Below, piece by piece: positions 9,729-60,600 of a stretch of DNA of 64,000 bases (its first letter is position 1; each line of letters begins with the position of its first letter). The notes below the pieces were generated by a model. That model was not told the origin of the DNA and did no database searches. It saw only the letters and a list, made by a program, of their open reading frames with translations. Position numbers and translations under genes: made by a program. Where the stretch lies: positions 11,098,001 through 11,162,000 of the forward strand of contig OZ365115.1 in assembly GCA_977030845.1 (NCBI GenBank), in the 5' to 3' direction. The DNA comes from Fimbriosthenelais zetlandica (Eukaryota).

Positions 9729-11884
9729 CAAATCTAGCCTCCCTAGCCATTTATCACATTGAGTTAAAATCACTTCTAGTTACCTGTAGATAAAATGTCA
9801 TTCAGAATGGAAACATTCAGTGATGCAAATTCCAGGCAATTGGCAAATTTAAGATTTTACACTTCAGCCGGATCTAAATTACAGAAAGCTGTTTTTTAAT
9901 TTCACAGAATTTCTCTACAATGAGGAATCTCTAGAATGAGAAAGTCCATGGGCTATCAGAATGAATTAACAACAAATTGTCATTGATATTTAGAATTAAT
10001 ATTTTGTGAAATTTTCCCCCAAATATGTGATTTGTCATTGCCTGATTTGCATGGTTGGGTTGTGTACATGTATAACCCTATATCTGGGGTGCATAGGTCC
10101 ACTTGATTCAAGAGGTGGCCCTATACATGAATTAATTTTTTTGGGTTTAATATTTGTAGTTGTTGGGAAGAAAGGAATTGAGGGGCAGCTGGTGGGAATG
10201 GGCATTGCCATGGATGGGGGAAGGAGTGGGTGGCCGGGGGTCGGGTGGCGAAACGGGATTGAGTGTTAAAACTGTGACATATTCTACGACTGTGAAATGC
10301 TCTCTTATTTGATTTGATTAATGAAAAATCGCGGAAATAACAGTGAAAATGATTTGTATTCTTAAGGTTTTATATATTTTCCATGTATTCTATTTGTTGT
10401 TTTAGGATTTTCTGTTGAGGGTGTGTCAAATGTAGGTACCCGTTTCACAAGAGTAAACTAAGAGCCGATTGAGAAACAGGTCCGGGATTGAGTAGTTTTT
10501 TGGTGAAAATTAATGTATAATTTAATTGTTTAATATGACAGCGAAACTTCCCAGTGTTATGTATAGGTAGAGTGACTCTGAGTCATACTGTAGTAGTAAA
10601 GGAATATAACAGATCTGACAAACTTTCACTATAGTAACTATGATACATTATGGAGTAGAAGAAGCACAGGCAAATTACAAATAATAGTAAACACTCTGTA
10701 TAATGAATAATTTTAGGACTGAGGAAAGGTCCTGGTCCTATATCATGGAAGTGTTCCCTTATCAGATGGGGCCTCATCCAACCTCAAAAACTTGAGACTG
10801 AAAGTGCATCGACAACTTTGGGGATAATTATCGAGTGGCTAAACTTTAGGTCTTAATTTCGATGGTTTCCCATCTATTTGGCATGTTATCTTGTTGGCAT
10901 GTTTCATTCTGTTACATAAATATGTTTCTGACTTTTCCTACCTGACGGACGTAGCCTGCAGGGTTTTCTATTTCAGGATATAGCCACTCGGGTATTATCC
11001 CCTAAATGGAAGTGCTCACTAAACTGAGGTTTTTGCTGTAATTAAATATTAGAATATAATTTATACCAACCGTAAAAGGTGGTTTTCTTGGAAATTTTCT
11101 TTTGCTAATTTTAAAATATATTTAAAGACAGCATGAACATGATGTTTTTCAACTTAACTTGCTTGACGTACAATTTGCCGTACGTGAGTGATTTTCAGTG
11201 TTTATTATGATTTATATATATGACATTTCTTTTCATGAAAAAAAATCTTAATTCTTGCAGCTGTGTGTGCTCCTCACTTGCGTTTGTAAATATATTATAT
11301 AACCGATAGCTGACTATGTAAAACCGGTGATCCCTTTGAGGATTTCGATATTTTTCATTCCCCAATCGATATTTTGTCAGTTCTCTGTGTTTTTTTAATT
11401 AAAGAGATCTCGAATTAATGTAAACGTGATGTATACATCATGAATGTCTAATACTAAATACTGATGTGTTTCTAACATAATTCCACATTGTAATCTGGTT
11501 TCTAGTTCAAAAAAACTTGGGAATAGTTTCCAAATTTTACACCAGTACATTAAAAAAAATACGAAAATAATAAATATTTAGATCTCACCTCACTTTCGGT
11601 GTTCCAGGATCTGTTTTTCTTTCAATAAAATACATGTATATATATTTGAATTTCAATTCAATTTAGTGTTATATCAGTATTTCTTCATACGTTGTAAATA
11701 GATTCTCTCGCGTTCTAGGCCTTGTGATATGTTGTACACCAGCAGGACAACCGGGCAGTCAGTGGCGCAATGACAGGCGGAAGTATGCGAGCGCCTGGCC
11801 CTGGCAGCTGCGCAATGAAGCATGAGACGTAGCTTGATCCATAGAACTAGTTCTATGCTTGATAATAGCAGAATAGGTCATCCT

Positions 11885-17961: not shown

Positions 17962-20900
17962 TCACAGGTCGATCCTGCTTGATAATCTACGTTGTAGCCT
18001 GGTGATCTCGTAAGCCGTACCAATAGACCTGGTAGAGGAATGTCGGTGTCTGCCGGTCGTCTTGTACCGGGTATAACCTGGTATACCCACCACGGTGGGT
18101 TTGTAGAAAGCAAAGGCGAAGTACTCGGTGGGTTTGAGTTTGGATGGCGTAAGTGGCATGGCTGCTACTGGCGTACCAGGAGGGGCGTACCGACCCCATT
18201 TGTCCTCGTCTTGATGAGGCCCCCATTCTTTGGTAGGTTTCATCACTTTTATTAAAAGCTGAAAAATACAATGGTAATTTTCATTCATTATTTTATGCAG
18301 ATAGAAGACGGGAAGAAATTCAGAAAATATTATAGGATGACTAGTGATAGCACAGGCGAAGTATTTGTTATTCGAAATATTTTTCACATTTTGGTAATAT
18401 CCATGGAGAAGATCCTTGAAATTCAACACATATCTCTTTTTTTATATTGTAAATGTTTTAAAATTTGAGTAAAATTTAATGAAAAAGCTTCTTACCCTGG
18501 CGCCGCCCATGGCACAGTAGTTGTAAATGAAGAAAATAACGATGAGCATTATCGGGAACATGGCGATGAGCCAGCCCAGGGCCTGGGCCCAGCCTGGGTA
18601 GAAGTAGTCACTGAGACTGGGGGGCTTGTAATAGGCTATGTTAAATAATATAGTGGCCAGGATGATACAGGGGGTTAGCCCCATCCAACTGATCTTCCAG
18701 TACCAGTTGGGCTTCTTACCCAACATCATGGAAATGTCATCAGCAAAGTTGTTATAACCTGGAAATATAAACGAAAGTAGTTATTAACTCCATAAATTAT
18801 ATTTATTACTGACATAATGTAAAGTAATAAAATGTAAATGAGGATAATCCCATACCACTGGCAACATATAAGATGATGTATTAGATATATTATTATAGAT
18901 TAATTCCATAACATTATATTCATTACCAACATGAATATATATGAATATATATATATTATATTAATATCAAATAACGATTATATTAAACAAAAATATGCAA
19001 ATTATATAAAATTTAGGGGACGTACCGTAGATCCAGTTGAGCACGACACATTCTAGGAAGCCCACAAGGAGGAGGGGGAATCCTGACACTGAGTAATCCA
19101 CTAGATTGAGTAGGTAGATGCCACCCCTGGTCACCATAGGCAGACCCAGGAGGAAGGAACACAGAATCACACAGACACGGAAGATGAGGTTACGCCACTT
19201 GGTCCTCAGGTGCTCATTGAACTCATCAGAGAAGGCACTGAGTACACACTCCACCAGCGAGAACTGAAATACAACAATCATAGGTTACAATAGTAACAGC
19301 TGAAACTTACTACTCATATACAGGGCCATTCAAAAGTTATGTAACACAGGATACAGATACCCTAGTTTATCTACTCAATCAGTTACATTGTATTATGTAT
19401 CTTTCTTTCAGATTCGGTGATAACATCAGAAGAATGTGTATACTTTCACATAATAATTATTAATATATAATATTGAAAAGGGCACAAGACTATAGGGCAT
19501 ATCAACAGCATAAGAGTACATTCTCTGGATTAAATCCGATTGATTGATAGATTGATGGATTGAATGATTGATGGATTGGTTTAGTAAGGATATAATTCAT
19601 GCCACTAACCTGCGAACCGAAGCCAAGTGTGGCCATCATGAAGAAGAAGAATATGGCCCACAACTGCGGGGCGGGCATTCTGGACAACGCCTCAGGGTAG
19701 ACGACAAACGCCAGACCAGGCCCTCCCGCGGCCACATCCTGCACCTTTTAAAAAGAACAAAAGAATTAACACATCAATTTGTGTTAATTGCAAACAGCTA
19801 AATTTTAAGCCATGATTATTTAGTGTTGCGGATGTAGTGCTTATTAAACGTTGCAAATACAGCGCTTATTATCTGTACCATTGTGACCACTCAGTAGCCG
19901 CTTAATAAACACTGCATGCCTAAAAATGTTGCCTAATATTCTGTGCACACCGCGGTCCCACTTAATCAACAAAAACTGCTCTCAGCTATTCTTTCAATTA
20001 TTTTTCTAATCTTTCAAAATTAAAATCATCCATCGGAAAGAGACCTTGGGAACATTCAAGTAAACACTTATTTCTATTTTGGTTATGTTCTTCAGTTCTC
20101 ATCAGGAGCTGTACCTAATATTTTCCCCATCCATTCATAAAACCCCGGGTAGGTTAAATTACCATCTCAAGTCACCTACCTCCACACCTTTTTCCGTAGC
20201 CATAAATCCAAGCACTGCGAAGATGACAAATCCAGCGAAGATGGATGTACCACAGTTTATCATGGATACAATAAGGGAGTCTCTCAGACAATTATTGTTA
20301 AATTTACTGTAGGACGACATGCAGATTAGACCACCACAGCAGGCAGACAGCGAGTAGAAGATCTGAGTTGCTGCATCACACCACACCCGGGCGTCACCCA
20401 GCCTGGAGAAGTCAGGTTTGAGGTAGAATATGATGCCTTTAGATGCTCCGGGAAGAGTAGCTCCACGGATGAGCAAAATAGTGAGCATGACATAAGGGAA
20501 GATGGCGGTGAAGTACACCACCTTGCCTAAAGATTGAATGCCCCGGATTAAGCAGATTAAGACGATAATCCATGCCAGGAGGAGGCATAGAGCAAGCTTC
20601 CAGTTGACACCTCCAGATTCATGGATTCCAGATGACATCTCCAGAACAAAGTTACTGTAAAAAATAAAATGATTTTATAGAAATTAAAATTCAATATTTG
20701 ATCAGATGAAGCAGTGTCCCTACAACTGGTCTGATTTGACAGATATTAAGGACTTTACTGTCAGACTTGTAAAACCAAAAATAAAGAAAGTACATAGTGT
20801 ATCTTTGCCTTCCTCCACCGTCTGCGTACAGTATTGTATAGATCCATGTCTTTTTCTGAGTTTTTGAGAGTGTAGACTATACTTATAATAATATATATAA

Positions 20901-23900
20901 GAGTGTTCTCCGGTAACCATAGCATAATAAAATACATTTGTGATATCGACTATGCCTTTCTGAGTCTAGGTGGGCGAACGACTTTCATGGCGATAAGGTG
21001 TCATGAGCAGAGACTGTGGGAATTCCCTCACAATAGAAAGAGACTGTAAGACTGTATTTCCTAACAACTCAGAAAGTAATCCTATAGTCAGAGAACAAGA
21101 AGCCATGCCAGAAAATCTATATGCTTATCTACGCTTGAGAATAATACTTCTCTATATCATAAACGGTATGGCTTCTATTAATACAATGAGAAAAAACCTT
21201 AATACTTCAAGGTTGACGGCAGAAAGGGCTGGAATTTTGAGTCAAATTATGAAAGGATTTTGATGCGCCTTTTCGCCTGGAACCACATAATTGATTTATG
21301 AAATATTGATTGAGAGTTTGGGTTACTTGTCCAAGCTTATAATGCGTCATTAAAGGCCTTTCACGAAAATTGAAATTGAAATTAAATTGGGCAAAAATAA
21401 TTAAACAGAACAAGAACATCAAGTCAATCTGGAACCTTGATAAATGATTTGATTCTTCGGTCGATTTTCATGAACTCAGTCGTGCAGATTGGTGTATACG
21501 GTACCTATAGTTTATCCCTTTAACAAAAGGCGAAACTTACTTATAATATTCCTCAGCTGGGGTCATCTCTTTCCCAGTACCGTTCCTCATTATACGTTCT
21601 CCCAAGCTAGCTGTGACATTTTTCAAGGTGTCCGTGACGTTTGAGAGTGAGTCATTTGAGGTTGTGTACACCGGTGCGATACAGTCGGGCGTATTCCACG
21701 GGTTATCACACGTGACCCAGGGTAGACCCGTGGGTATGGAAGCGAAGGAAGCGAAGAGGAATACTAGGATATGGCTAATGACAACATTGTAATATACAGC
21801 AATAAGCCACGATATGGACACTACTGCATAACCTAAACCTGAAAAATAAAACACAAACTCTCAACTCCATGTCAAATTTGAGATCAACTAACAATTCAAA
21901 ATAATTGAATCTTTTACGGATTATTATAGGACTTTAGATAAAGCTTTGATATTTCCTTTTATGCCTTAAAAACAAAATGATCCCCATTCTTACTGTAACA
22001 CATTTATATTTTAAAACACATGTATATTTTAAAATTGATTTACCTTTAAATAGAGGATTAACTTTCCAGATGGCGATAGGGCCAAGACTGGCAAATTGAC
22101 CAAATGCGAGTTCCATGAAGAAAAGTGGAAGACCTACTGCCCCCAACATTATGACGTAAGGTATGAGGAAAGCACCTGAAAAATACGACAAAACCTTCAT
22201 GTTACAAGTATATCTACAGTATATCTATATATCTACAGTTACATCTCTACCGATTTATAGATCAATTATACCCCTAAACTTCATAGCCACTTATATATAA
22301 TATATTGAAATTCTGTCACATGTTAAATGAATCACGTCTTAGAAGCAGACATCTCCTAAAATCAAAATTGATTTAAAATGAGCCCAATGTCAACATCTCT
22401 TAGTGCCATCAAGTGGATTGCCTACAAGTGATCACACCTCGTCCCCTATCGACCACTTCACAAGGACAAATTGCCACGTGAGACATGTCAGAAGTCTCGT
22501 ATTTGTTGACAGAACCACTTGTCATGTGATCGTCGCCATTTTGTTTGATTGATGGAGGCACTCAAGCAGCGCGGATTTCCTACCAATATCATCTTATAGC
22601 AGATCACAGCGCAGAACATTGCAACATCAAATTTTTCGTAAATGAAGAATACTATTTTTTCTGCATTGGATGTAAGATTTTAAAGTTTACTATGTCATTT
22701 GTGCTTTTAATTTTAGGAAATACTAACAGGACTAAATGAAGTAGTTCATGATAGGAGACCCAACTGAGCCCATTATGAAAAGTGATATGAAATAAAACTA
22801 GTATAAAATTCCATACGAAACATGAGATTTTTTCTTTTTATCACACTACAAGCCACCCCCATATGACAATATATTCTCGCCTGAGCATGCTAAGCAATAT
22901 ATTTTAGGATATTTCCAGAAAGACAAAATCAAAATAAGTTTTTAAATATAATCTGCAATTAGAGACAAAACATGACGATACATGCTGTCTAATCCATTAT
23001 GTCATCATTATTATTAAAAACAAATTGTGAAAAGAAAAATTGGGATCATAATAATCCACTTCAATTAAGAAAGCAATATAGTAGATCATTTCACATGTCT
23101 CCTAATTGATGACTATCATTTATACCATGTCATAATGAATGTGATCATTAATCAGCAATGTGCAGTTTCCATGACGACAGGTAACAACAATCCAGCCATT
23201 ATATTTTAATGAATGTGGTTGGATCGCCATGCGGGTTTGTAATAATGCTGAGCTAATCACGGGAAAAAAACTGTTGAAAAGAATTGTTGAGAGTCAGATA
23301 TCCAGACAATGTTTGCCCGGCAACATTGTCTGGAGAACGAGTGTTTTTACCCGAGGACAGGTAAAGACTGGTCTTTCCCCATATCAGTATGGACCAAATG
23401 TAAGTCAAACACCGTTTGTTTTGGCAGTAGATAAGAGATCAATCGCCTCCGTTATACAAGCTGGAGTGTGCTAAACAAGCATATTATATAGTTAAATATG
23501 CATAGTAGTATAGGCACATGGTGTCATTTTGTAAGTAGCATAGGGAGATGTTCATTTGCTCCAGGCATCACTAAACGCTGCACTCCATCATTAGCAGTTC
23601 GATGACCATTATCACCTACCAGACTTTCAAGCATTGTCAGGAAGGTAACAGGATTAAGGCTTACAGGCACGTATCTTGAAATGCATTACAGATTCCATTA
23701 GTTACTCAACATGTCTAGAACGTGGAGAGTAGGTATTAAGTGCATCCAATTTAGAACACTTTATTTGCCTCTTTGGCATCGCTTTTTAGACCTGAAATGC
23801 TAGAACTATTGAACCGAACTACAGATATTCAAGAGAACCATAATCCCACCTGATCCTCCAATCCCAATACACTGACAAAATAATAGTCAAATATAGTCAT

Positions 23901-26900
23901 TAATAGCAAGGGTGTGTTCAATAGCCTTCCATATTTTGACTAAGAATAGCAGCAATGCACTCTGAATGATTATTATTAGGTCTGGTATTTCCATAGAATA
24001 TTATTATTAAATGATTATATAGTCCTTTTGCAATTATCTCGGAAGGAAAGTTTTTCAGTGTATAGATTACCACCCATATGTCTGGTATCAGGTGCGGAGG
24101 GCAGGCTGGATTGTTTGATCTACAGCCCAATGATTCCCACGAGGCATGCAAGTACACATGCTTAGATAGATTAGCCGAGATTCACTACACCTGCAGGACA
24201 TATAACAGATGTTCTATACCACAAAAATTCATCCATACTCCATATAATATGGTGTGTATTCCATATTGAATAAAGTAAAATATTCCGGAAACTTTAATAT
24301 AATCATATCATTGCAAGCAATTTAAACCTTAAATTTTTAGCAAAATATGGTACTTGTAAAATAGGCCAGCAGTACATAATGGTCGGATGATATGGCACTA
24401 CAAACGCTGCCCTGTCTTATAACATGACATTTAAACATTGTCCAGACACACCTCCATACATCCTTCTCCACTTCCCGTGAAAACTGAGAGGCTTTAAAAT
24501 CGCTGAGTCAGCAAGTTCTTTAGTCAGAATAAGTGTTTCTCCAGCAGCAAGCCAGCGGCCTGGGAAATGCGCCTCTGTCACCAATTATTATGTGACCTTA
24601 GATGCCTGTTCATACAGCATATGTTTGGATGGATCCATCATAAATGATTACAGGTCATGAGCAATTTAAGTGCAATCTATTGCATGTAGACCTGAGATCA
24701 TCATTAGCATTAACAGGCACTTAAGCTATGAGGCATCTCTGGACACATTTTTAATATATAACAATTTTAATATAATTTATCAAAAATCTGTATAGCTAAT
24801 GTATGCATCCATATCTTCATGAATATAACATAAACTATACACTCCATTAGCCATCTATCCACCCTTCCACCTACATGTATCTCATTTTCTCACCCACGTA
24901 GGTACTTAATTATTCCCATTAGTCTTCGGTGCGTCACCTACTCTGACAGGAGGAAATCTTGAAGGCCATTCAGTATTATCTACCAACACCACGTGGTCTT
25001 GTTTACCCCATGGACAGCGTCTGTGACGTCAGAGCTACCCTTTCCACTACAACACCACCCTAGAAACCCCCAACCCTCCATAACAGCCCCCACCCCACCC
25101 AAACCCATCCATCACCCCTCCATCCCACCTCTATCTAGCCTATAGGATTAATCCACTGCCAACACACCCCTCTTTACAGCCTATAGGAGCATCTCTCTCC
25201 TGCCACCCCTATCTGGTATATTAGACCCGTCCAAACGCGGGGTATTGACTGGGGAGGGTTGGGAAAGTAAGGGCAAGTAGGGGCGGTGGATTGTCGAATT
25301 ATACACATACCTGACATTTAAATCTTTCTAACAGAGAAAAGCTGGCCTTCTAGTTGCCTTCTATTTTGGTTACCATTCACCACAAATCCACACAAAAATT
25401 GAATTTTCTCAAAATAGAACTCATTCAATACAAGGTGATATACATAAGTACAAACCGTATGTAGCCTATATGCTATTGCTTCAAAATACAAAGTCAATGT
25501 ACATTGTACAAGCATTGCAATTAAAGCCATCTGTTTTTTCTTCGTGGGCTTTCTATTCAGATCGCGCTGTCCCTTAATTAAATAACTTAATTAATCAGAG
25601 GAAAGTCCAGAATACTGCCAGCTATAGGGCCTATAGGGTAATCAGCTCGCACTTATATTACCACTTGTGATTTCAGACCAATCTCCTTACTCAAACATAG
25701 TCTAGGAATATTTTAAAATTCTCACCTTTCAAATTTCACCTAAGATGCAGGCCATTTTATTATACAAGAAAGGACCATTTAGTACATAAATTGGAGACAC
25801 AACTACTGCTTAATCAGATGCCTGTTAAGATGCTATTACCTTAATCATTATAATATAGATAATTAGTACTAACACTTTGACACTGTCATCATAATTTTAA
25901 GTTTAATGGTCATCATTGTGAGACATTAGGTCCCTTCCCTGTGGCTTCAGGTGCTTAGGAACTGAAGCTAGGGGTGACCTTAATTGTCAAGATCACTCTT
26001 CTACGAACATTGCAACATATTTTAAGGGGAGAAGCGGCCCTAATATGAGGCCATATGTTAATGGACCAGAAACTTTAGGGCCTTACAAATGCTGATTAAA
26101 TTGTCTATATAGATTCCATGAGAACAAAAATCACAAACCATTTAGAAACATTTATAGGTAATGCTAATCCAATTAGAAATAAATGCACATCTTTCTCAAA
26201 ATAACACACAAAATTGTTAACCAAAATCTTGATTCCCACATTTACAAATGGTCCTAAAGCAGTGTCACTTTTACATCCAGCTCGTGGCTCTTAGCAATGA
26301 ATCACTTCACAGATAATTGACCTCCACTACCTACAGCGCTGTATATATAAGTTACCATAGCAACCCTTGATGATGCAGTTAGGGCCACATAACCATGAAT
26401 ATAGAGTTGGCCTCAACCCATCACAATTCAATTTCTACAGGAGACTGAACCCCAATCCAATCTCCAACAAAACGCACCACACATAGATTGTATACATAAT
26501 ATTCTCTTCCAGTTTAAAAAAAATCAAAACTTCACCAATTTATCAAGAACATTGTTTGTATTGGTATTGTATTTTACTTGCATATTATATATAATTTCAA
26601 TACAGACATATGTGTACATGTATATATAATATACATTTATGTGAATAGTATGTTTCTAAAAATGTGAATGGTCGGTTTGTGGTGACATTGAAATGAAGAC
26701 CTTGCACTTGTTTTATATTTGTTAAAATTACTTGGGCCTTGGGTATAAATACATGGGCCTTGTGCACGACTACCTATAATGTCACGACCCTCTATAGTGT
26801 ATACTTTTCTATATATTATGAGGTTTATCTAGTCAGTCATAAACCCTTTAATGCCGAAGATTGCCAAAGGGCACTCACGGCTTTTTTTTTAGCCAATTTA

Positions 26901-29900
26901 GAGCAAGGGATTCTCTACATTTTGGTGAAAAAAATATTCCAAACTCCTATTAGAAGTCGAGATACAGCCTCTTAAAATTGGCAAGGTAGACACCCCTAAA
27001 ATAAAAACCAATGGTTGAAAGTAAGGTAATTGTTAGGTCTATATTAACGTTACACCTCTATACTTCACCTGATTATCTTTTTTTTTAAATCAATTTATTA
27101 AACCTGATATTTCCTCGGCCAAGTGGTCGCTTTACAGTGAATATCAGGGTAATGCATGAATGGGTGATCTTACGCAACAATTAGAGGTGAACATTAGTGG
27201 CGAGTGAGAAAAAAACCCAGTCAACCATGGTTGCAGAACAACTACAATCAGTCAGATAATTATGATTTAACCTAACATAAGAAGAAAAAAAAACATGGCC
27301 GCTAATCACTGCTGATCTTATACCCGTTAATGACATTTACCTCTCCTACTCAGACACCTCAATATGCCTACACTCCGACCATTGTCTGCACAATAATTTA
27401 AAAATCAAATCACCAGTGGGTGAGGTACCCTGGGTGTGTCTGGTTGTAGATGTGTTTTATGACGTGTGACGAGCCATGACGCGTGACCGCATGAGAACGG
27501 TGACATACTCCAGTTACACTACACTACAGCAACACATCCCTAAATAAAGGGCGACATTCTGACACAGCCTCCTTGACGTGCGACACACAGAGTTAACACA
27601 AACTGACACGCGACACGACACATTTTTATCGTGACATAATCATTCTGACACAGGAATAAAAAAGAGGACCCCTAGGTGTGGATCAATATGACATGTTCAA
27701 GGAGAACACTGATCATAACAAGTATCTTATTATCTCTTACTAATATAATACTTCTATATGAGTTGGGTGTTTTTTCACTGCACTCGCAGCAATCCTTCCT
27801 CAAATGGACATCTCAACATTTAGGACGGTCTTTTACCAACTCAAAGCTGAGCCAAGCCACTGTGGATACGGGGAAAGGTGGAAGTTTAGCCAAGCTGAGC
27901 CAAGCCACTGTGGATACAGGGAAAGGTGGAAGTTTAGCCAAGCTGAGTCAAGCCACTGTGGATACAGGGAAAGGTGGAAGTTTGGGATTAATCATTTTGA
28001 GACGCAGCATTATGAAGAAAGATGGCCTTTACAATATATCTCTACCTTCAGATAACATTTATAACTTAACTTCCATGATCCGAAACAGAACCACGTATTT
28101 CCTGAACAAGACACATCCTCTCCCCATCCAAGCTTTCCTTTATAAGTTCCGGGAGTACATACAGAATGAGTTTCCAGGCACAGACATGGCTAGAAACATT
28201 GAATATAATCATGAATGGCAGCCGCAAGTGGCTGTCAACAAAGGATTATGTAGAAGCATCTCTAAATGGTTTAACTATAACATCACATTGACAGTGGACT
28301 TGCCATCTCAGGTTGTCCATATAAATGTAACAGAGCATTGGACAGGGACAGGACAGATACCTTATATTCCAAATGACTTGTTTGCAATTATTGAAACTAA
28401 ACACACTAAAGCGAGATGTAGTACATTGTATGATGGCAATGAGAGGCATGAGAGAGATCGTATATATGTGATACAATGTCCCGTGTACGACATCCGGCCA
28501 CATGTCAACATCCGGGCTTGTTATAGACATATATCTACATATGAGACAATATGTCCAGTATTTCCCCTCGTCACAATAAAAGAGAGGTTACTCATTGAGA
28601 CAGGACCTCATATTGACCACCCAGTACCTCACAGTCTAACACAATGTCCCTTAAATCACACTCATCATAAGATTGGTTTTTGGATCAGAATTAACCAAGT
28701 CTGGCATTGGAGTGTGAGGGATTGTTATTTCCCGTTATACGTCTCCGGTGTTTTGAGACAGGGTCTATCAGATCGTAGACGCCGGGTTCTCTTTATTGGT
28801 GACTCTCACGTGCGCTGCCAGTATTCTGGTCTGCTGGAGTTTTATAACGTCTCTGTTGACTTTAAGTTTTCATCTACATCATCTTGTTTAGCTCATATTT
28901 TAAACCACAGACTTCCCAGCCTTCATAAGGAACCAATCTTCTTGCTCAACTCCGGGTCGTGGGATCTGAGATTCATGGATCTCACCTCCTACATTACTGG
29001 TATGACTGATGTCTTTAATGCAATTAAAAAACTAAAGTCTAGAAGACCAGGTGTTAGAATATTATGGTTAGAGACGTGTGCCTACCCTTATGGGACCACC
29101 CGACATAACCGATACCGGCTAAACCGTGTTATAGAAGGCGTGAATGAGTGGGTTAATCATAATATGTACCGGTTAGGAGTCCATGTCATACATTTCTATA
29201 ATGTATCTATACCCATGGAATCCTACACGAGAGATGGCAGGCACTATTACTTCTACATGGGTCCAGCTGCTGTGAAAAATAAACATAACGTCAGTGTTGG
29301 TGGAACTATGGCTGCTATTATACTGAGATATATAATGGCCGATACCAGCGACCTGTGAAGCCTGGCCACAGATATAACTGTTGCATGCATGATTGGATTT
29401 AGTACAACATACTGAGAAATAAAAGACATAAACATTGTAAGTAATAATGAAATGAAATATTCATTTTAAGTGTCATAAAATGATCAAAATGGCTTTCTAA
29501 GGCCTGGTTGAGGACTTCGTATTCCTGGAACAGTCACTTCTATAGGGTCCGGCATTAAAGGGTTAAGCTCGTCTTCGCATGATTAAGGCAATCAGGTTAT
29601 GTTATCCGATACTAATGCTCTATAGATGATTATATGCAGACTATTACATTAAACCATACAATGCCATATTTCCTACCCATTATATATCCTAGGCTTTTTC
29701 ATTTAAAAAAAACAAGAGTCTGAATAATGCAATGCAGTACGGTAAGCATATAGCGTTAGAGAAGATTTCCAAGGACATATCAGCAAGTCCTCTATCAGTT
29801 AGCTTTCCACACCATATTGTATTTCACCTTCCTGTTTCATTTCCATGTTATGTTCTCAATGACATTGACTTCTACCATCTTACTACACGCCCTTCAATTC

Positions 29901-38900: not shown

Positions 38901-41900
38901 ATGAGCTCCTATATAAAGAGCAGTTCCCAGCAGAAAACGACATACAAAGTTCAGGTGGGTCATACCTGACTCATACCAATATAATAGGTCAGTCATTTGC
39001 ATAATTAGTGATGTCAGCCTCTTCAAGTGTCTTGGATTATTTATTGCCACTTTCATGGGGTGAGGGTCCCGTATTAGATGCACCAAATCTGATTCTACAG
39101 AACTGAATATTTGAACCCATACGGTCCTGTAAATTTAACAGGACCCCCATGTAATCCGTATTTATACTTCAATTGAAGTCAGCATCTATAGGGACATATT
39201 GGTGCATTTTCAAAGTCCCAAACACTAATTACCCCTTTACCGACTTTCAGGGAAGGCAACTTGAATATAAATGCATATCCTGTACTTTACATCCATACAT
39301 TCATATCATCATAATAAAAAGCCTGACAAAGTGAAATGTTAAGTGGCATACCATTAAAGATTAGAACAACAATTTAAAGGATGTGTCGGCTCCACCACAA
39401 CCAACATCCTGATTATATTTCATATCCTTCTATTACACAACCGCATGATAGAGGATCCTAGATACAACTATCAACAGTTCACACAAGGTTTACAGTAGGA
39501 AATTCTCCACCTCTAAATCCTAATAATACATAATACACATCAACGGGTCAGTGGAGCGACAGACAGGTCCCGGAACAAAGCAATAAAGAGTCGAACTATT
39601 TTCAAAATCAGAAATCACAAAGTTTTTTTCTACTTACCACCGCCATTTTTGTAGCAGAGGTAGGGGAATCTCCAAACATTGCCGAGGCCTACGGCGTAGC
39701 CGATACAGGTGAAGATGAACTCCATCTTGGAGCCCCAGTTACCCCGGTCATCGCCTTCATATAGTCCATTCTCCTCCTCTTCCGCGGCTCTGTTCACACT
39801 AGTCTTACTGGCACCCAATGCTTTATCTATGTCTATCTTTAATGTCACTTTCTTCTTGTCCTGAAAAATAAAAATAAAGATTTTCAGAATTAGCAATTCT
39901 CATAGAGCTCGAGCTTTATGCAGAGAAAAAATGAATTATTTTCTTTTCCTTGCCCTAAAAAGAAAAGTTTATTTTTCAAAGAGTTCAAAATTATAAGCTT
40001 AAATAAGCATTACTACTAAATCTAAATGATAATTACCAGTTCACCAGCTTGGAAAACGAAAATAAAATATTAAAAGATGTACGAGACTAAAAATGTCGAT
40101 ATAACTATTTGCAAACCTACAACGAAAAGGGACGAGGAAAAAGAATGTTATCATGAAATATTCAATATATTAGTTAACAACATCAACAAGAACTTAATTT
40201 AAATAATAATTGCAAATGTCCAAGAAAAATCCAAAACATATGGAAGGTTCTCCAGTGTAGAAACAAGCCTTGTGAAATTCCATTCTCCATGATTGTGATG
40301 CTTGGAAATAAATTATTGTGAAACCAGGAAAACAAAAATCTATTGAGTATTGTAACCTTAAAACTAAGTGATAAGTGAGGGGGTGGTTCTTAAATATAAC
40401 ATTGTGATCATAATAAATAAAAGGTAATAATAAATATTGATGGATGCAATTGGCTATTATAATGGCGTCATATGATAATAATAATATGGCATAATCTGTC
40501 TTGTTTATGTTTAAAGAATAAAAATGAATCAAAACAAATGAGAACCAATTGATATCAAATACGCAAGATACTCATTTGCATGTACATTTACATATACATT
40601 CGTCACTCCATTGAGATAGAAGAAAAACCAGCAAAACTATACACAGGATCCAGTTCAAAATATATTTTGCCATATATGATGATTCGAAAAGCTTGTGCTA
40701 TGAATATATATCTAAGCCCTTACAAAAATAATGGATTTACTCAAAACCGTTCCCATGTAACAGTTCCCATCAGCAAAGATAGTGGAGAATTCTCCACTAT
40801 CTTTGCCATCAGCATTAGCGAGGGGACTGAACAAAAAAATACTTTTGTTGTTCTGCCCCCAAACCAGACAGTAAATCATCCTAAATTCCATTCCTTCATT
40901 ATATCTGCAACTGACAGATAAATTAGTGGTAAGATATGGTAGTAATTACCCTGTTTTATGGTTGGTTTATATCTGGGTCTTGTTGACACAGTTCAGTGAA
41001 AATGGGTCATTTATTTCGACCGAGAATGTCCCTGAAGCTTCCTTCAAATCAGATAACAGGTACATCTTTAACGTTTGCCAATTGTATAACAGACCTGCCA
41101 AAATATCTTGGAAAACATACCACTAAGTCTATCCTAATTTGCTTGTACAGCCTTCATTTCATTCTCAAAGAAGAAAGAGGAAACAAAATAAAACTAAATA
41201 ACGAAAACAGTGTGAAGATTGCTCTTTTGGCCTAATTGATTTTTTTAATTTTCAGTAATTTTAATTGCACACAACTGCCACAGACATTCAACACTGAAAG
41301 AACAGAAGTATTTAAAGCTAATCTTGCTTGAATAAAAGAGTTCCAAGGATAAGTAAGGACTTTTAAGAACCATGTCTTGGTCCCCTCCAACTATACAGTG
41401 TATCTTTTTTAAAATCACTTGGCAGTGTATGATACCATTACGACTGCAAAAATAACTGCCTTCATGATTTATGCATTAAGAATAGAAATTTTTTCCCATG
41501 GGATCTGAAAGATTTCTCTGATCCTTCCCCTGTGGTAAACCAACCACCTGCATGAAATCAGTAGCAAAAACTTCAAAAGAAAGGACCGATGACCACGATA
41601 GATATGGGAAAAAATAGGAACCGAAACTTTATGCAGGGTTAGGATTCAGGCTATTTTGTTGCATAATTATATCTAACTGGAGGGGATATAATTATGTACT
41701 TTCCATCTACATATATGTAGTATGGAATTAGTCACGGTGCTTTGAGTCAGAAGCAATAGCTCTAATATAACTGTTGTTATTATAAAATGGAAACACGTAC
41801 ATAATCTACATATGGGAATTAGAGACATAGAGTGAGTTTTACCTTTATACATTGACATATTAACATGATTGGCTGCTCAGAAACAGCTATTAGCATTCCT

Positions 41901-47900: not shown

Positions 47901-50900
47901 TTTGCGAGGTTCACCCTAAATGCCTTCCTCGTGTCATTGGCATTCCATTATGAGATGGTATTCTATTGAAACCATATTTGTATGAACTTGGCAGCTAATC
48001 AAGACCACATCATGTGATTTACTATAATACTATAGATTTACTATCTTAAAATGGAAGCACGATACATTATGTGTAATTAAACACAAAGGTTAAGTGTGTA
48101 TAATTTGGCGGGGTATGGGTTGAGACCTGTGGTTGTATGGAAGGCTCTACATTCCAGCCTACAATACCAGTACATTCTGGGTTTGTCTGCCTTCTAGATC
48201 CCCACATGTGAGCACACCTTGATCTGGAGTAGATTTTGACACCACTCCAGCACCAGGAAAAAAACCTGGCGGCGCTCCCACGTACCTCTAGCTGCTACTA
48301 GGTTGATAAGCAGCTTACACTGATAGATTTTACAGTAAATACTTTTAAAAAAACTGCTACAAAATTGCAAGAAAGGCCATTTTTTATACATCATGTCCGA
48401 AAAGCTTCAAAGGTAAATGAAGATGTCATGTGTTTAGTGTGGGTAATAAAAAGGGATATTAATATTATTTTTGTTTGATTAGCCTCAGTATTATGAGGTG
48501 GTTGAGTTGGTTGATGTTAAAGGTATTGACAGATGGTGTTTGGTGGTGTGCATGGTCTCACTGAGTGCAATATTAATGTTAATACATGTATTGTTATGAT
48601 AATTTGTACCCAAATATATAACTACATGTACAACCAAACACTACATGTATTGCAGTTAACCTTATACAATGTACATGTACATGTATTACCATGAATTTTA
48701 AATAGTTTAATACATTATTTACGAGATCGTTCAATAATTCAATCATGACAAAAAGGCTCATGATTGGAATTTAAAATGGCAAAAAGGCTTATTAATTAGC
48801 GTATAAATTTGCTTTAAGTATAGGTTTCAAACAGATGCCACAGCTGCATGGATTTCTAGTTATTTTCCAATCATAAAACCGCACCTCAATACCCACATAA
48901 AATGGGGGGCCAGGTAGATCAGGCTAATACTATTAGCGTGCTGTGAATATACAGGGAGCTATAGATAGAAACATCCTCTTATGGAAGCACTGATGGCATC
49001 AAAGGGTGTACTTAAAGTAGAGAGCACAATTTTGTGTTGTACCCAAAGTGCCTCAATGTTTTGTCCCCGAGTCTTGCCTTTGGGGGGATTTGGATGGATT
49101 TATGAGAGTAAATGGGGAAGGGGTGGATAAATGGATATAGAAAAGATGGGGGGCAAAGATGAGAGAATTAGAGAAGAAAGGACAGAAGAGGAGATAAACA
49201 GTAAAAGAACAAAGAAGACCAAGACAAAGAACAACAAAACAAAAGAACAAGAAGTAAAGCAAGGGTATACCTAATATAACGCGGACAAAAGGAAAGGGGA
49301 AAAGAAGAATGGAGAAGGGAAAGTGGGGTGGTGGAGAAGCGGTGATACGAAAGGCAAATTGGATCTGATGACATAACAGGAAAGGTATAGGGAACACAAG
49401 TTATATTTAATCTTAAGTTCGTGCGACATTTGAAGACACGACTGTGCTACCATAGATGCATCAGAATGACCAAGATAAGTGATAAATAAAGGTGTGGTGG
49501 GGAGGGTAGACTATTCAACCATCTCCTCACCTCATTCTATCTGATCTCAGGGTAGTATGACACGCTTCAGTAACTCAAACATCCCTCAGCTTTTATTGCC
49601 CACACGCAAATGCCCCATCCCATACTAAATATAAACCACTCAATGGCATGTATAATCCAGATAAAAACACCCACGGATATGTTTGGTTCCATCATGGAAA
49701 AAGCCAAAACCATTGACATAAACCTGGCATTTCTCTTCTTTAAACTTCGTAGGGGTGTACCATCTGTAATATTTCTAATATTGCGTTGTGTGCTTTTAAT
49801 ATAAAAATGTATTTATATTTGAATTTATGAGAGGTTCAGTCAATAGGGACGAAAAGATAAATAATATAACCCTGCATTGCAGTTAAGGATTCACGCATTA
49901 AATATTTTACGGTTTAAATCGAACCATAATCCATACATAAATGCCTTTTAAATAAATGAAAATCACCTAAATAACCAAGATTTAATCATTTTGAAATACC
50001 CCAGTCTAGTTGACAGAACATATCTACGTATACACACGTATGGGATGCAGTACTAGTGGTTTTACAGTTTTCCTCAAGGTACCTTTCTAACTACTATCTG
50101 ACTCACCGAGAGCCAAGCAGGAAAGTCAATATTATTGTTGATATTGACATTACTGACTGAACTGCTCTCAGTGGAAAAAAACCGCCAACCCACGTGGTTT
50201 CCACGTGTATAAGATGTTAGTGTGAGACCCAGACCCAAACCGGAACTACATGTACCCCTATCTAATATTTGTAACAGTTGTACTATACATGCATGTATAC
50301 TTACACATTATAGTATACTCCTCTTATGATCACAGAATGATGATTAAATCATCATAATGATTGGCATGAAATAGTGTTTGGTTTTGTTATGTAATTTTGG
50401 GATCGTGTACCAGTGAGTTGACAAAACATGTTTGGTTAAAGAGAGGGAAAGGTAAACAGTTGAGTTTTGTCCTATTCTAAACATGAATAGGTTCAAAAGT
50501 TCATACAGAAGAAAACCTGGTATTAAGACTAGTTTTAGATTTGAAGCTGTGTGCTTAAATCCTCAAACTGTAGGCGAATTAACACATAATGTATGTCTAT
50601 ATTTAGTCGCAACAGGACATTCACATTGGCCATTTATTTCTATCGCCTACTATTCCACTTTTATATACGTCATAAAGGTGCAAGCAACTACACCTATTTG
50701 ATTTTTTTTTTACCTCTTCAGTGCTTTCAATCGTGGGCTCTTTATTTTCAGGAGTCCCATTTCCCCATGCAATTTCCTATTATATTGCCCAGTTTCACTG
50801 TCCATCTCTCTCCATATGCTTCTCTGTGACTCTCGATCTCTCTAGTTTTGTCCCCGCCCCCCTCCCTCCATCCCTCACTCATACGATCTCTACCTCCCTT

Positions 50901-57454: not shown

Positions 57455-58029
57455 AAATACATATAGGCTAAATGCAACTAAATTGGCCAATTATAAATTG
57501 TACAGTTCACTGTTACTGGGTGAATCATTGTTACAAGGAATTCCAGCAGGATGTGGAACATTTTACAACTGGAGCATTACCAGGGCATTTACGTTCAGAC
57601 TATGAATAACCAGGCAATATGTAAAGTTAAAAGGAACATTGAAAAGGAACTAAAATACCAACATACAAAAATATTCATGAGGCATATTGCCTTAATATCT
57701 ATAATTCTGTAGATCTAGATTATTTCCCTTAAATGATAGCTGACCTAATTGGAGTGAAAATAACATTATGCTGAGCCATTTTATCTTGAAGCAAGCTGTA
57801 TAAAAGTGTTCATGCATGAATGCCTACTTCCGGGGACAGTTAACTTAGTTTCAGACCATCATGATAGTCATTGTTATAAATCTTATACATGTAAATCAGA
57901 ATGCTAGAACCATGTTCAGAAAACCAAACCAATTCAACATAGGTTTTCCTATGGGAAAAAGTTACCCAAAATGCTTTAAAGAGTATATTATATCAATCCA
58001 AAATTAATCGATTTTCTGGATGATAGAAA

Positions 58030-58074
58030 ACTGAAAAATTGTTGAAAGTGACGTTAAACCCAATTCAATCAATC
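58030..58074 (+). mobile_element. Isolated SINE 3' tail fragment
   Basis: actgaaaaattgttgaaagtgacgttaaacccaattcaatcaatc differs at 2 positions from the tail of the SINE at 60354-60600. Confidence 0.8.
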
Positions 58075-58194
58075 ACAATTTATCACAATCTCATTTTATA
58101 CACAATTAAAATAAACTTATGTTCCTAAAATAAGAGAAATCAGTTGAGTTTTTACACCTTTATTGCCAGTAAAGTTAATCAAGTGATGGAATAT

Positions 58195-59004
58195 TTAGAC
58201 ACCGGAGACCTCCTTGATCCAGCTCCTCACCGCGCCTATCCTAGTGTAGACAGACGGGAAAGACGTGTAGCATCCGCTAATACCAAACGATGTCACCCCA
58301 GCCAGCTTCCCTGAGCATACAAGAGGGCCTCCTGAATCACCATTACAGGAGCCAGCACCGCCCCTCCCACCTACACATATATGGCCTTCATTAACAATGG
58401 AGAAGCTGAGCCGACATCGAGGTAGAGAGAGCACAGGAAGGACCGCGGCCTGGAGGGTGGTGGGCAGGGAGGCACCGCCCTCAGTAGTAACACCCCAGCC
58501 TGAGATGGTACAGCCTTGACCTGTGAAATCATCAATGTTCTCAGCCATGGCGATTGGTTGGACATACTCGTTCATTTCAACGGTGTCCATCAGCTTGATC
58601 ATGGCAGCATCAGTGGTGTCAACCCGACCAGTCCACCCTGGATGGACAATGATGTCATCAATATAGTAACCGACCGGAGCGCCAACTGAAGTGTCACCTC
58701 GTCTGTGGAGTCCCATGACAACGTAGAGTCTATACTTTCCATCTCCGACACAGTGAGCCGCTGTCACAACCCAAGTGTCAGAAACCAAGGCACAACCACA
58801 GATGTGACTGCCAAAGGTCTCAACTGCAGACCTCCTCCGACCAATATACTGGAGCGATCCTTGCCACGGAAACTCACCAACAAGGGCATCCCGACCATGG
58901 ATGATGAAGGGATTGGTCGACTCTTTGTTGATAATAGGAATATTATGAGCATAAATGGTGTAGGCACAGACGGCCAGGATGGCTGTAAATAGCATGGTCT
59001 TCAT
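58195..59004 (-). CDS. Intronless secreted S1A serine protease (chymotrypsin/elastase-like, resembling invertebrate fibrinolytic enzymes), 269 aa
   Basis: Signal peptide MKTMLFTAILAVCAYTIYA, propeptide ending NPF|IIHG, TAAHC (His), TTDAAMIKL (Asp), GDSGGP (Ser). AGSC gives a non-Asp S1 residue. AATAAA at 58164-58159. Confidence 0.95.
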   Translation of the reverse strand: MKTMLFTAILAVCAYTIYAHNIPIINKESTNPFIIHGRDALVGEFPWQGSLQYIGRRRSAVETFGSHICGCALVSDTWVVTAAHCVGDGKYRLYVVMGLHRRGDTSVGAPVGYYIDDIIVHPGWTGRVDTTDAAMIKLMDTVEMNEYVQPIAMAENIDDFTGQGCTISGWGVTTEGGASLPTTLQAAVLPVLSLPRCRLSFSIVNEGHICVGGRGGAGSCNGDSGGPLVCSGKLAGVTSFGISGCYTSFPSVYTRIGAVRSWIKEVSGV

Positions 59005-59064
59005 GATGGTTGTTCTGGTCGTCACAAACAGAAAGTCAGTGTCAAAGGGAGGTGCAGCACAGGC

Positions 59065-59102: not shown

Positions 59103-60353
59103 GTAAAGCTGATCATGTAACACCATCTGCTGAAAGCATCACTGTAAATCCCCGTATGGGGATATTCATTGGAATGACATCTATGACAAAATTTAGTGAA
59201 TAAATATCTCTTGAAAATACTATGATTATAAGATTATTCAGTGGGCAATGCTGGTGACTATGAATGTAGAATTTGACCTTTTGGGAAGTTCAGCAATTTC
59301 TTGTAGGGAATAGGGATACTGATGCTACTTATTTATGATAAAAAATAAATATTTAGCCCATTGACATAAAGGACAGACAAGGGTTAAATATATAGCCATT
59401 TTAACACAAACTGTCAATGTAAATGACTGTGGATCTATATAAAGAAATAGTGTAAAATAATAGTATAAGTATAAAAAGAGTTTGACAGGTTTTTCAATTT
59501 TTACAGTAGCGTGGGAGATGGTAAGTTGGCAACAGGTGTGAAGATAATATACGTAGAGGCGGGCAGATTCTTCTCTTTGTTCTTTGCCTGTTTATCTATA
59601 TCTTGTCATTGTGTTACACAAACTGTATAGATCTATAGACCCACATGGCCATGGCCATTAGTTTAAATCCCAGGGACATGAAACTGAAACAAAAGTATCA
59701 GTTAAGACTTTTCATGAAATTATAGAAAATATCATTAATTAATGTACAGTATATATATATACTCTATATGTATATTCTATTAGTTTGGCATTGAGATAAT
59801 TTGGAAGTTGAGCCAAAATAATTCCTTTATCATAACCGGTATTTCTCATGAGAACTGGCATGCAGAAAAACACTATGAAAATAAGAACGAGGAAGAAAAA
59901 ATATTATATATCGTGTCCCCTGTTGGGTTCGTAGAAGAATTTTTTCCCCCACAAAAATGCTATCTACGCCTATACATGGTCAATGGTTTGAATGTTTCAT
60001 CCTGATCTGGAAGCACTCTGAATGACACATTGCGCACAAATGTAGAAAATAAACAGAATCAAAACACAGAATCGCTGCACCCCTCTCAAGAAGAATTTAC
60101 AAGAAAAGTGGCACCACCACTGGAAAATGAGATCATCCAAATCCTGTCCGCATCTTTGGAATAACATTGTTAAAATACAAACATTTGACACCCATCTACA
60201 CCAGCATCATAAATTTATACACCAGCAACATATATAAAGAGAGAGGTCCTCACTTCATATTATAGAGTATGTCCATCTGACAGCTGACATAATCGTATAT
60301 ATTAAACTCACAGGATAGAATTCATTGTGCCCAAACTCAGTTTAAATTGGTTA

Positions 60354-60600
60354 TGATTGATTGATGATTGATTGAATGGGGTTTAACGTCACTTTCAACA
60401 ATGTTTCAGTTATATCATGAGGGTGCCTACTTGTGACAGTGAACCCTCATTTAAAGTGCTGCCTCATTGAGGTATCATATCACAAGCAGATAATATGAGA
60501 TCTCACCCAGTCACATTATACTGACACCGGCTTGACCCGGCCGCGGTTCGAACCGGCGACCTTCCACACATGGAGCAGACATTCTACACCGCCGCCGTGT
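60354..60600 (-). mobile_element. tRNA-derived SINE (MetaSINE-like) with (TCAA)n tail
   Basis: Minus strand: B-box ggttcgaacc, body ggtgtcagtataatgtgactgggtg...gaggcagcact...tgttgaaagtgacgttaaacc, then a tcaa repeat tail. The family name is from recalled resemblance only. Confidence 0.75.

What the first reader, a model, noticed from the sequence alone, without database searches (positions are those of the whole stretch)
26840..29566. A complete host-type enzyme gene packaged inside piggyBac-like terminal repeats (candidate gene-capturing, Pack-type transposon)
Perfect 13-bp TIRs (ccctttaatgccg ... cggcattaaaggg) with CCC/GGG termini, an intact right TTAA and a left TAAA enclose 2719 bp. Inside are a putative promoter region, an intact intronless 556-aa SGNH-fold ORF and its AATAAA, but no transposase. 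CCY ends, ~13-bp TIRs and TTAA targets are the established piggyBac signature. This would explain why the gene is intronless and nested antisense in an SLC6 intron. It could be a route for spreading glycan-modifying genes in this lineage. Two unrelated MITE ends flanking the gene by chance remain possible.
Basis: partly seen in the sequence, partly recalled or inferred. Interest (0 to 1): 0.85.

Follow-up and report, generated by a model that had tools for sequence, protein, structure and literature searches.

The report
Enzyme gene inside piggyBac-type transposon ends
A complete enzyme gene sits between two perfect ends of the kind used by piggyBac jumping genes, so it is probably a rare gene-carrying transposon, but I could not test whether it has ever moved as a unit.

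Summary
A perfect inverted repeat (13-bp CCCTTTAATGCCG, 15 bp with the adjoining AA) lies at 26844-26856 and 29550-29562, flanked by TAAA on the left and TTAA on the right. It encloses 2,719 bp with one intact 556-aa ORF and no transposase.

An inverted repeat of this length alone is not significant: about 0.57 are expected per shuffled window. The sequence is what matters. The 17-mer TTAA plus this repeat ends many elements in metagenome contigs of other hosts. These include 94- and 138-bp MITEs and 2.7-kb elements encoding decayed piggyBac transposase (Pfam DDE_Tnp_1_7). So these are genuine piggyBac-superfamily ends.

The cargo is a real gene: a type II membrane protein with an NXPE-like fold and an intact SGNH motif set. 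It lies antisense in a roughly 17.4-kb SLC6 intron.

Not supported: capture does not explain the lack of introns, because homologues in other species are also single ORFs without such ends.

Not testable here: other copies, a parental copy, an empty site, an autonomous partner, expression.

Verdict: probably one non-autonomous piggyBac-type element carrying a whole gene (about 0.6). The main rival is two independent truncated ends flanking a resident gene.

The parts
26840..26843 (.). Left flank TAAA, a degenerate copy of the expected TTAA target duplication (3 of 4 bases)
   Evidence: Read directly. With one mismatch it matches TTAACCCTTTRAYGCCR.
26844..26856 (+). Left 13-bp terminal inverted repeat CCCTTTAATGCCG, with the CC[C/T]T piggyBac terminus
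   Evidence: It is identical to the terminus of piggyBac-type elements in other hosts.
26857..27687 (+). 5' non-coding interior of 831 bp. It is the presumed promoter region of the cargo gene, rich in TGACG/GACAC motifs. Its function is not tested.
   Evidence: Sequence. It has no similarity to the right end, to other parts of the window or to transposase.
27688..29358 (+). Intact intronless ORF of 556 aa. It has an N-terminal signal-anchor helix, a repeat-bearing stalk, a beta-rich domain and a C-terminal SGNH/PC-esterase-like domain (NXPE-like architecture).
   Evidence: ORF. There are 53 HMMER relatives, the best 40% identical. GDS(H), N486 and H519 are invariant in the family alignment, and D516 lies in the 'DG.HY' motif of its consensus line. 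The AF2 model has pLDDT 75.5. Foldseek top hits are NXPE1-4, CPED1, plant TBL/XOAT and CASD1, and SGNH esterases in the PDB.
27844..27987 (+). Three tandem 48-bp repeats (98% and 90% identical to the first) that encode the stalk repeat [16 protein letters not shown]
29418..29423 (+). AATAAA polyadenylation-type signal, 60 nt after the stop codon and 126 nt before the right repeat
   Evidence: Read. Its use is not tested.
29550..29562 (-). Right 13-bp terminal inverted repeat (CGGCATTAAAGGG on the + strand)
29563..29566 (.). Right flank TTAA, the canonical piggyBac target site
   Evidence: an exact 17-mer match on the - strand.
21937..22224 (-). Open stretch (stop to stop) holding the host SLC6 exon that matches Pfam SNF profile positions 37-86. 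This is the downstream boundary of the intron holding the element.
39633..39899 (-). Open stretch (stop to stop) holding the host SLC6 exon that matches Pfam SNF profile positions 1-37. This is the upstream boundary of the roughly 17.4-kb intron holding the element.

Best explanation
The stretch 26844-29562 is most likely one non-autonomous element of the piggyBac superfamily. It inserted at a TTAA-type site in the large intron between the first two recognisable SLC6 exons, antisense to that gene.

Its two 13-bp ends (CCCTTTAATGCCG) are the sites that a piggyBac-type transposase, encoded elsewhere, would bind and cut (inferred). Where the transposase gene would be, it carries a complete, apparently functional cellular-type gene. 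The gene has about 830 bp of upstream sequence, a single 556-codon exon and an AATAAA.

The protein is a type II membrane or secretory-pathway protein with the NXPE architecture. Its SGNH/PC-esterase domain keeps the GDS(H), Asn and DxxH motifs. Its likely activity is transfer or removal of O-acetyl groups on glycans (inferred from fold relatives NXPE1, CASD1 and plant TBL/XOAT).

How the gene came to be there is not shown. Either it replaced the interior of an element by template switching during repair (the 'gap-filling' route that dominates animal Pack-TIRs), or the composite formed elsewhere and jumped here. I put roughly 0.35 on the unit having transposed as a whole.
For: 1. The ends are real piggyBac ends.
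- In 84 of the 120 loci, the sequence inside the terminus matches another locus whose outside flank differs. They form at least five families, and similarity starts exactly after TTAA.
- Complete elements with a partner repeat plus TTAA measure 94 bp, 138 bp, about 1.4 kb and about 2.7 kb.
- The 2.7-kb ones encode decayed piggyBac transposase: Pfam DDE_Tnp_1_7 at E=8e-23 and 3e-18, plus zf-Tnp_2.
- Coral piggyBac AmiPB2 has CCCTTTAACGCCC, and CC[C/T]T is the superfamily hallmark (PMC2872659).

2. The two repeats are perfect and of the same variant. No inner partner end (TTAACCY or RGGTTAA) lies between them apart from a chance one inside the ORF. So neither end is a complete small MITE of its own.

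3. No transposase remnant is present.

4. The cargo is an intact family member with conserved catalytic motifs and a confident NXPE/SGNH fold.

5. There are no signs of retroposition: no poly(A) tract and no internal direct repeats flanking the gene.

6. Gene-carrying TIR elements are documented in animals (Pack-TIRs). Whole-gene cases include Ssk-FB4 (PMC8277862).
Against: - Only one copy was seen, and no other copy of any part of it is in the window.
- The genome could not be searched. Multi-copy status, a parental gene, an empty site and an autonomous partner with this repeat are all unknown.
- The left target copy is TAAA, not TTAA.
- Beyond 15 nt the two ends are unrelated, as would also be true of ends of two different families. 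In the other hosts many different families share this same terminus.
- In those hosts roughly a third of ends with 3.2 kb or more of sequence inward of the end had no recognisable partner within 3.2 kb. Solo or truncated ends therefore exist.
- A possible third, solo end (CCCTTTGATGCCA, flanked by TACA) lies at 48994-49006.
- Animal Pack-TIRs are rare, about 2 per 10,000 TIR elements. They usually carry about 224 bp, and 87% belong to hAT or Tc/mariner.
- Homologues of the gene elsewhere are ordinary intronless genes without such ends.
Confidence: 0.6

Rival explanations
1. There were two independent insertions. The left and right repeats are the surviving outer ends of two different, internally truncated piggyBac-type elements that happened to land in convergent orientation on either side of a resident nested gene. 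Nothing was captured.
For: - The subterminal sequences of the two ends are unrelated.
- In other hosts many distinct families share exactly this terminus.
- About a third of ends with 3.2 kb or more of sequence inward of the end lack a partner within 3.2 kb.
- A possible solo end of the same repeat group lies 19 kb away, at 48994-49006.
- The family's genes are ordinary intronless genes elsewhere.
- Whole-gene Pack-TIRs are very rare.
Against: - It needs two insertions of the same perfect 13-bp variant within 2.7 kb, in the right orientations, and both then truncated. No inner ends or TTAA-bounded small elements are present.
- The density of such ends in the window is low.
- My rough estimate gives well under one such arrangement per genome, unless this repeat is very abundant here.
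Confidence: 0.2
2. The element is real but never moved with its cargo. A non-autonomous piggyBac-type element already sat in this intron. The gene, copied from a parental locus, was pasted between its ends during double-strand-break repair (transposition-independent gap filling). This would make it a single-copy Pack-TIR and a dead end, rather than a route of spread. It is a variant of the best explanation that differs in mechanism.
For: - In 100 animal genomes, single-copy Pack-TIRs were mostly attributed to gap filling, and only four (1.4%) were multicopy (PMC8277862).
- Only one copy is seen here.
Against: - Those cases carry about 224 bp on median, not a 2.5-kb transcription unit.
- No parental copy could be sought.
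Confidence: 0.35
3. It is a chance inverted repeat. An ordinary nested gene happens to be flanked by a 15-nt perfect inverted repeat that looks like a piggyBac end.
For: Perfect inverted repeats of 15 nt or more at this spacing are expected 0.57 times per window. The finding was picked after the fact, and one target copy is imperfect.
Against: A chance repeat would not be expected to be identical over 13 of 13 bases, plus the adjoining TTAA, to the terminus of transposase-bearing piggyBac elements and their MITEs. In those loci, termini beginning TTAACCCTTT are dominated by this repeat and a handful of close variants.
Confidence: 0.05

Closest known systems
Non-autonomous piggyBac-superfamily elements and MITEs (e.g. 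coral CMITE families and AmiPB1-6, PMC2872659; the metagenome-contig families found here, L009-L128)
   Same: - A 13-bp terminal inverted repeat starting CCCT, next to TTAA.
- The terminus is identical to that of elements encoding DDE_Tnp_1_7 transposase.
- It is 11 of 13 identical to the left repeat of AmiPB2.
- At 2.7 kb it is about the size of autonomous relatives.
   Different: - The interior is neither a transposase remnant nor anonymous filler. It is a complete cellular-type gene.
- One flank is TAAA.
- There is no subterminal similarity to any of the retrieved families, apart from about 14 further nt shared with L072.
Pack-TIRs of animals, especially the whole-gene case Ssk-FB4 in Drosophila (Tan et al. 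2021, PMC8277862); Pack-MULEs of plants
   Same: TIR-bounded, transposase-less element whose interior is host-gene sequence. Ssk-FB4 likewise carries upstream sequence plus nearly the whole gene.
   Different: - Reported animal Pack-TIRs are 87% hAT or Tc/mariner, with a median cargo of 224 bp. piggyBac is not mentioned in that paper's main text.
- Here the parental copy and the copy number are unknown, so the defining 'derived from a host locus' criterion is untested.
NXPE family (NXPE1 = sialic acid O-acetyltransferase, PMC12216134), CASD1 and PC-esterase / plant TBL-XOAT O-acetyltransferases (the cargo protein)
   Same: - Whole-length fold match to NXPE1-4 (Foldseek E about 1e-11).
- SGNH domain with GDS(H), Asn and DxxH conserved.
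- N-terminal membrane anchor typical of Golgi glycan-modifying enzymes.
   Different: - About 10% sequence identity to NXPE proteins.
- Pfam NXPE4_C is not detected in this protein and only borderline in relatives.
- It belongs to a small, patchy family: 53 hits in 1.84 billion representatives.
- The activity is untested.

Membership tests
piggyBac superfamily (non-autonomous member) | Terminal inverted repeats of about 12-19 bp beginning CC[C/T]T | tested here: met
   Perfect 13-bp CCCTTTAATGCCG at both ends. The criterion is taken from PMC2872659.
piggyBac superfamily (non-autonomous member) | TTAA target-site duplication on both sides | tested here: inconclusive
   The right flank is TTAA and the left is TAAA. 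One substitution, or a non-canonical insertion, is needed to explain the left flank.
piggyBac superfamily (non-autonomous member) | The same ends occur on elements that encode a piggyBac (DDE_Tnp_1_7) transposase | tested here: met
   Met in other hosts only. L044 2566-5269 and similar 2.7-kb elements carry the identical terminus and DDE_Tnp_1_7 plus zf-Tnp_2 fragments. An autonomous partner in this genome could not be sought.
piggyBac superfamily (non-autonomous member) | Evidence of mobility: further copies at other TTAA sites, or an empty site in another allele or species | not testable with these tools
   No sequencing runs were listed. The protein is not on record. No relative closer than 40% identity exists in the protein library.
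Pack-TIR (gene-capturing TIR element) | TIR-bounded, no transposase, interior made of host gene sequence | tested here: met
Pack-TIR (gene-capturing TIR element) | A parental, TIR-less copy of the captured sequence elsewhere in the genome | not testable with these tools
SGNH / PC-esterase-type (NXPE-like) enzymes | Catalytic motifs: GDS(H) block I, Asn block III, DxxH block V | tested here: met
   G371, D372, S373, N486 and H519 are invariant and H374 nearly so, across 21 family members. D516 lies in the 'DG.HY' motif of the consensus line.
SGNH / PC-esterase-type (NXPE-like) enzymes | SGNH alpha/beta fold preceded by an NXPE-type beta-rich domain | tested here: met
   AF2 model with pLDDT 75.5 and pTM 0.77. 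NXPE1-4 are the top hits, with E 2e-11 to 6e-10 over nearly the full length. PDB SGNH esterases and O-acetyltransferases match the C-terminal ~200 residues.
SGNH / PC-esterase-type (NXPE-like) enzymes | Pfam NXPE4_C (PF24536) or GDSL models above the gathering score | tested here: not met
   Only Lipase_GDSL_2 at 15 bits (cut-off 32.9) and SGNH at 12.7 bits. The relative P0005 reaches 29.4 bits against a cut-off of 27 for NXPE4_C. This is a distant relative, not a Pfam-defined member.

The most novel reading that the evidence does not exclude
This is a live vehicle: a piggyBac-type element that has replaced its transposase with a working glycan O-acetyl-modifying enzyme gene, carrying its own promoter. 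In this reading it is copied to new TTAA sites by a resident transposase, so that this enzyme family spreads in the genome, and possibly between species, by cut-and-paste transposition.
Probability: 0.15. Interest if true: 0.75.

Novelty: new member of a known kind. Interest (0 to 1): 0.45.

Why it matters
In animals, DNA transposons that carry host sequence are rare and nearly always hold short fragments. Very few whole, expressible genes inside transposon ends are known; Ssk-FB4 is the textbook case. The survey I read does not discuss piggyBac-type examples.

If this unit is mobile, it shows that piggyBac elements can duplicate and relocate a complete enzyme gene together with its regulatory DNA. 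It would also give a natural example of a piggyBac 'cargo vector'.

If it is only two stray ends around a nested gene, it is ordinary.

Tried and rejected
- **Sequencing runs.** I searched for public runs holding the region, to look for an empty site or expression. None was listed, twice, so read laying could not be used.
- **Protein look-ups.** The exact look-up of the protein found nothing on record. The word-based homologue search gave no hits. The exhaustive HMMER search was needed.
- **Single-sequence AF2.** The model was useless, with pLDDT 37. It was replaced by a model built on the family alignment.
- **PIF/Harbinger reading.** A 14-bp repeat ACCC... with a perfect 3-bp TAA duplication fits the letters. 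I rejected it because the same 13-mer with TTAA bounds transposase-bearing piggyBac elements.
- **Kolobok.** This superfamily also duplicates TTAA and is noted elsewhere in this genome by the scan. I did not pursue it, for the same reason.
- **Retrogene inserted into a MITE.** There is no poly(A) tract and there are no direct repeats around the gene.
- **Transposase remnants.** None is present in the element or the window.
- **Other copies in the window.** No part of the element recurs. The only possible further end of this repeat group is at 48994-49006.
- **piggyBac ends around homologues (L001-L008).** No flanking pair is convincing.
- **Literature.** A search for the repeat sequence found only unrelated primers.
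- **Earlier scan notes.** None gave another piggyBac element or paralogue in this genome.
- **Base composition.** The ORF has GC3 of 0.41, against 0.53 for two neighbouring genes. The sample is too small to interpret.
Full report
**1. The observation.**
Reading 26700-29700 shows TAAA, then CCCTTTAATGCCG at 26844-26856. Its exact reverse complement is at 29550-29562, followed by TTAA. The repeat finder gives a 15-nt, 100% complementary pair (26842-26856 / 29550-29564), because the inner AA/TT of the flanks also pair. The outer ends are 2,719 bp apart.

A MAFFT alignment of the left end against the reverse complement of the right end shows no similarity past those 15 nt. One long ORF lies inside (27688-29358, +, 556 aa from the ATG). 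AATAAA is at 29418-29423. The described features are all present.

**2. Is it more than chance?**
By length alone, no. In 60 first-order Markov shuffles of the window, perfect inverted repeats of 15 nt or more spaced 0.5-6 kb occurred 0.57 times per window, and 48% of shuffles had at least one. The real window has one other such pair outside a palindromic array. No other part of the element is repeated in the window.

**3. Are these transposon ends?**
I scanned the metagenome contig collection for the exact 17-mer TTAACCCTTTAATGCCG. I oriented them on the match.
- Most loci have unrelated sequence up to TTAA and then fall into families with shared sequence after the 13-mer.
- In 84 of 120 loci, the inner sequence matches another locus with a different outer flank. 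The families have 50, 19, 6, 6, 3, 3... members.
- Complete elements with a partner repeat plus TTAA measure 94 bp, 138 bp, about 1.4 kb and about 2.7 kb.
- The 2.7-kb elements contain decayed ORFs that Pfam assigns to the piggyBac transposase domain DDE_Tnp_1_7 (E=8e-23, 3e-18, 7e-9) and its C-terminal zinc finger.
- In those loci, termini beginning TTAACCCTTT are dominated by this repeat and a few close variants, GATGCCG/GATGCCA/GACGCCA.

A paper on coral MITEs gives CC[C/T]T, 12-19-bp repeats and TTAA as the piggyBac hallmarks. It lists AmiPB2 with CCCTTTAACGCCC and a MITE family with CCCTTTAAGCCCTA (PMC2872659).

The window's ends are therefore identical to genuine piggyBac-superfamily termini. 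A chance repeat would not be expected to coincide with them. Those contigs are not from the window's organism: the whole window shares only one 44-nt match with them, and the element shares only its terminus.

**4. The cargo.**
- **Family.** Pfam sees only weak GDSL/SGNH signals, and a word-based search finds nothing. An exhaustive HMMER search of 1.84 billion representatives finds 53 relatives, 13 below 1e-30. The best is 40% identical over residues 92-549. Some relatives reach or approach Pfam NXPE4_C.
- **Motifs.** In a 21-sequence alignment the invariant columns include G371-D372-S373, N486 and H519. H374 is nearly invariant. D516 sits in the 'DG.HY' motif of the consensus line. Together these are the SGNH motif set.
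- **Fold.** With that alignment AlphaFold2 gives pLDDT 75.5 and pTM 0.77. Foldseek's top Swiss-Prot hits are NXPE1-4 over nearly the full length, then CPED1, plant TBL/XOAT O-acetyltransferases and the SGNH domain of CASD1. PDB hits are SGNH esterases and O-acetyltransferases. The ESM Atlas points the same way.
- **Known function of relatives.** NXPE1 is a sialic acid O-acetyltransferase (PMC12216134).
- **Other features.** The N-terminus is a long hydrophobic helix. The stalk contains three 48-bp tandem repeats.

So 'complete host-type SGNH enzyme gene' is right. The activity (glycan O-acetyl transfer or removal) is inferred.

**5. The setting.**
On the minus strand, Pfam SNF profile positions 1-37 lie at 39633-39899 and positions 37-86 at 21937-22224. 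Further exons are at 21540-21860, 20162-20638 and 18445-18780. The element therefore lies antisense in a roughly 17.4-kb intron of an SLC6 transporter gene.

**6. What is not supported.**
- Relatives sit on large genomic contigs of another organism (0.6-4 Mb) as single ORFs of 492-556 aa that align end to end.
- Two of them, 59% identical, lie 8.4 kb apart in tandem.
- None is bracketed by a convincing piggyBac-type pair.

Intronlessness is thus a family trait, and at least elsewhere the family grows by ordinary duplication. The same window also holds another intronless gene, a trypsin-like protease.

**7. One element or two ends?**

*For one element:*
- Both repeats are perfect and of the same variant.
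- No inner end or TTAA-bounded small element lies next to either repeat.
- There is no transposase remnant.
- The pair neatly encloses upstream region, ORF and AATAAA.
- There are no retroposition marks.

*For two ends:*
- The subterminal sequences are unrelated, and in other hosts many families share this very terminus.
- There, 10 of 29 ends with 3.2 kb or more of sequence inward of the end had no partner within 3.2 kb.
- A possible solo end of the same repeat group, CCCTTTGATGCCA flanked by TACA, lies at 48994-49006.

My rough estimate is that two perfect convergent solo ends around one gene should occur well under once per genome unless this repeat is very abundant here. I therefore favour one element (about 0.6) over two ends (about 0.2) and chance (about 0.05).

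The left TAAA needs either one substitution or a non-canonical insertion. In the piggyBac mechanism the excised element carries TTAA overhangs from its donor site. An insertion at a non-TTAA site could therefore leave unequal flanks. This rests on my own knowledge of the mechanism and was not tested.

**8. Mechanism.**

*Shown:*
- The ends are piggyBac-type.
- An intact NXPE-like gene lies inside.
- There is no transposase.
- The location is an SLC6 intron.

*Inferred:*
- A transposase encoded elsewhere would act on the ends.
- The cargo arrived either by template switching during break repair at a resident element, or by formation elsewhere followed by transposition. The first is the dominant route for single-copy animal Pack-TIRs.

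With one copy visible I cannot choose. I give about 0.35 to movement as a unit.

**9. What could not be done.**
No public run was listed for the region. The protein is absent from the assembly index. No relative closer than 40% identity is in the protein library. Earlier notes of this scan show no other piggyBac element or paralogue in this genome.

**10. Verdict.**
The piggyBac nature of the ends is now well supported by independent data. If real, it is a new member of a known, rare kind, and of moderate interest.

Noticed in passing
window 58029-58088 and 60351-60411 (gene at 58195-59025, - strand): A second intronless gene, a 276-aa trypsin-like serine protease (Pfam Trypsin E=1e-52), is enclosed together with about 1.3 kb of its upstream side by a 61-nt inverted repeat. 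The repeat is 90% complementary overall and 96% over 47 nt. There is no other copy of the arms in the window and no clear target duplication. It could be another gene sitting between transposon-like ends.
   Followed up: partly
window 48994-49006 (- strand): CCCTTTGATGCCA is identical to a partner-repeat variant seen in the piggyBac families of the metagenome contigs. It is flanked by TACA instead of TTAA, and no partner lies within 6 kb on its inner side. It may be a decayed solo piggyBac-type end or a chance match.
   Followed up: partly
loci L009-L128 (metagenome contigs): At least five unrelated element families in AT-rich, eukaryote-like contigs from a few sample series share the identical 13-bp end CCCTTTAATGCCG. 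Their sizes range from 94-bp and 138-bp MITEs to 2.7-kb transposase-bearing elements. The two ends of these elements typically differ at position 7 (A on one side, G on the other). The host organism was not identified.
   Followed up: partly
L005:7116-7551 and L005:11937-12358: In another species, a homologue of the cargo gene (P0005, at 10001-11572) lies between inverted arms about 430 bp long and 70-82% complementary. They are probably two copies of a dispersed repeat in opposite orientation. The termini are not piggyBac-like.
   Followed up: no
L003:112-1590 and L003:10001-11500: Two homologues of the cargo gene, 59% identical, lie 8.4 kb apart on the same strand. In that species the family has grown by tandem duplication.
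   Followed up: yes
window 27844-27987: Three tandem 48-bp repeats (98% and 90% identical to the first) lie inside the ORF. They encode a repeated 16-residue stalk segment, which points to recent in-frame expansion.
   Followed up: no
window 26844-26876: Five bases after the left repeat there is an inverted, shortened copy of a repeat-like motif (TGCCAAAGGG), so the first 33 nt can fold back on themselves. It is not followed by TTAA. Its meaning is unknown.
   Followed up: no
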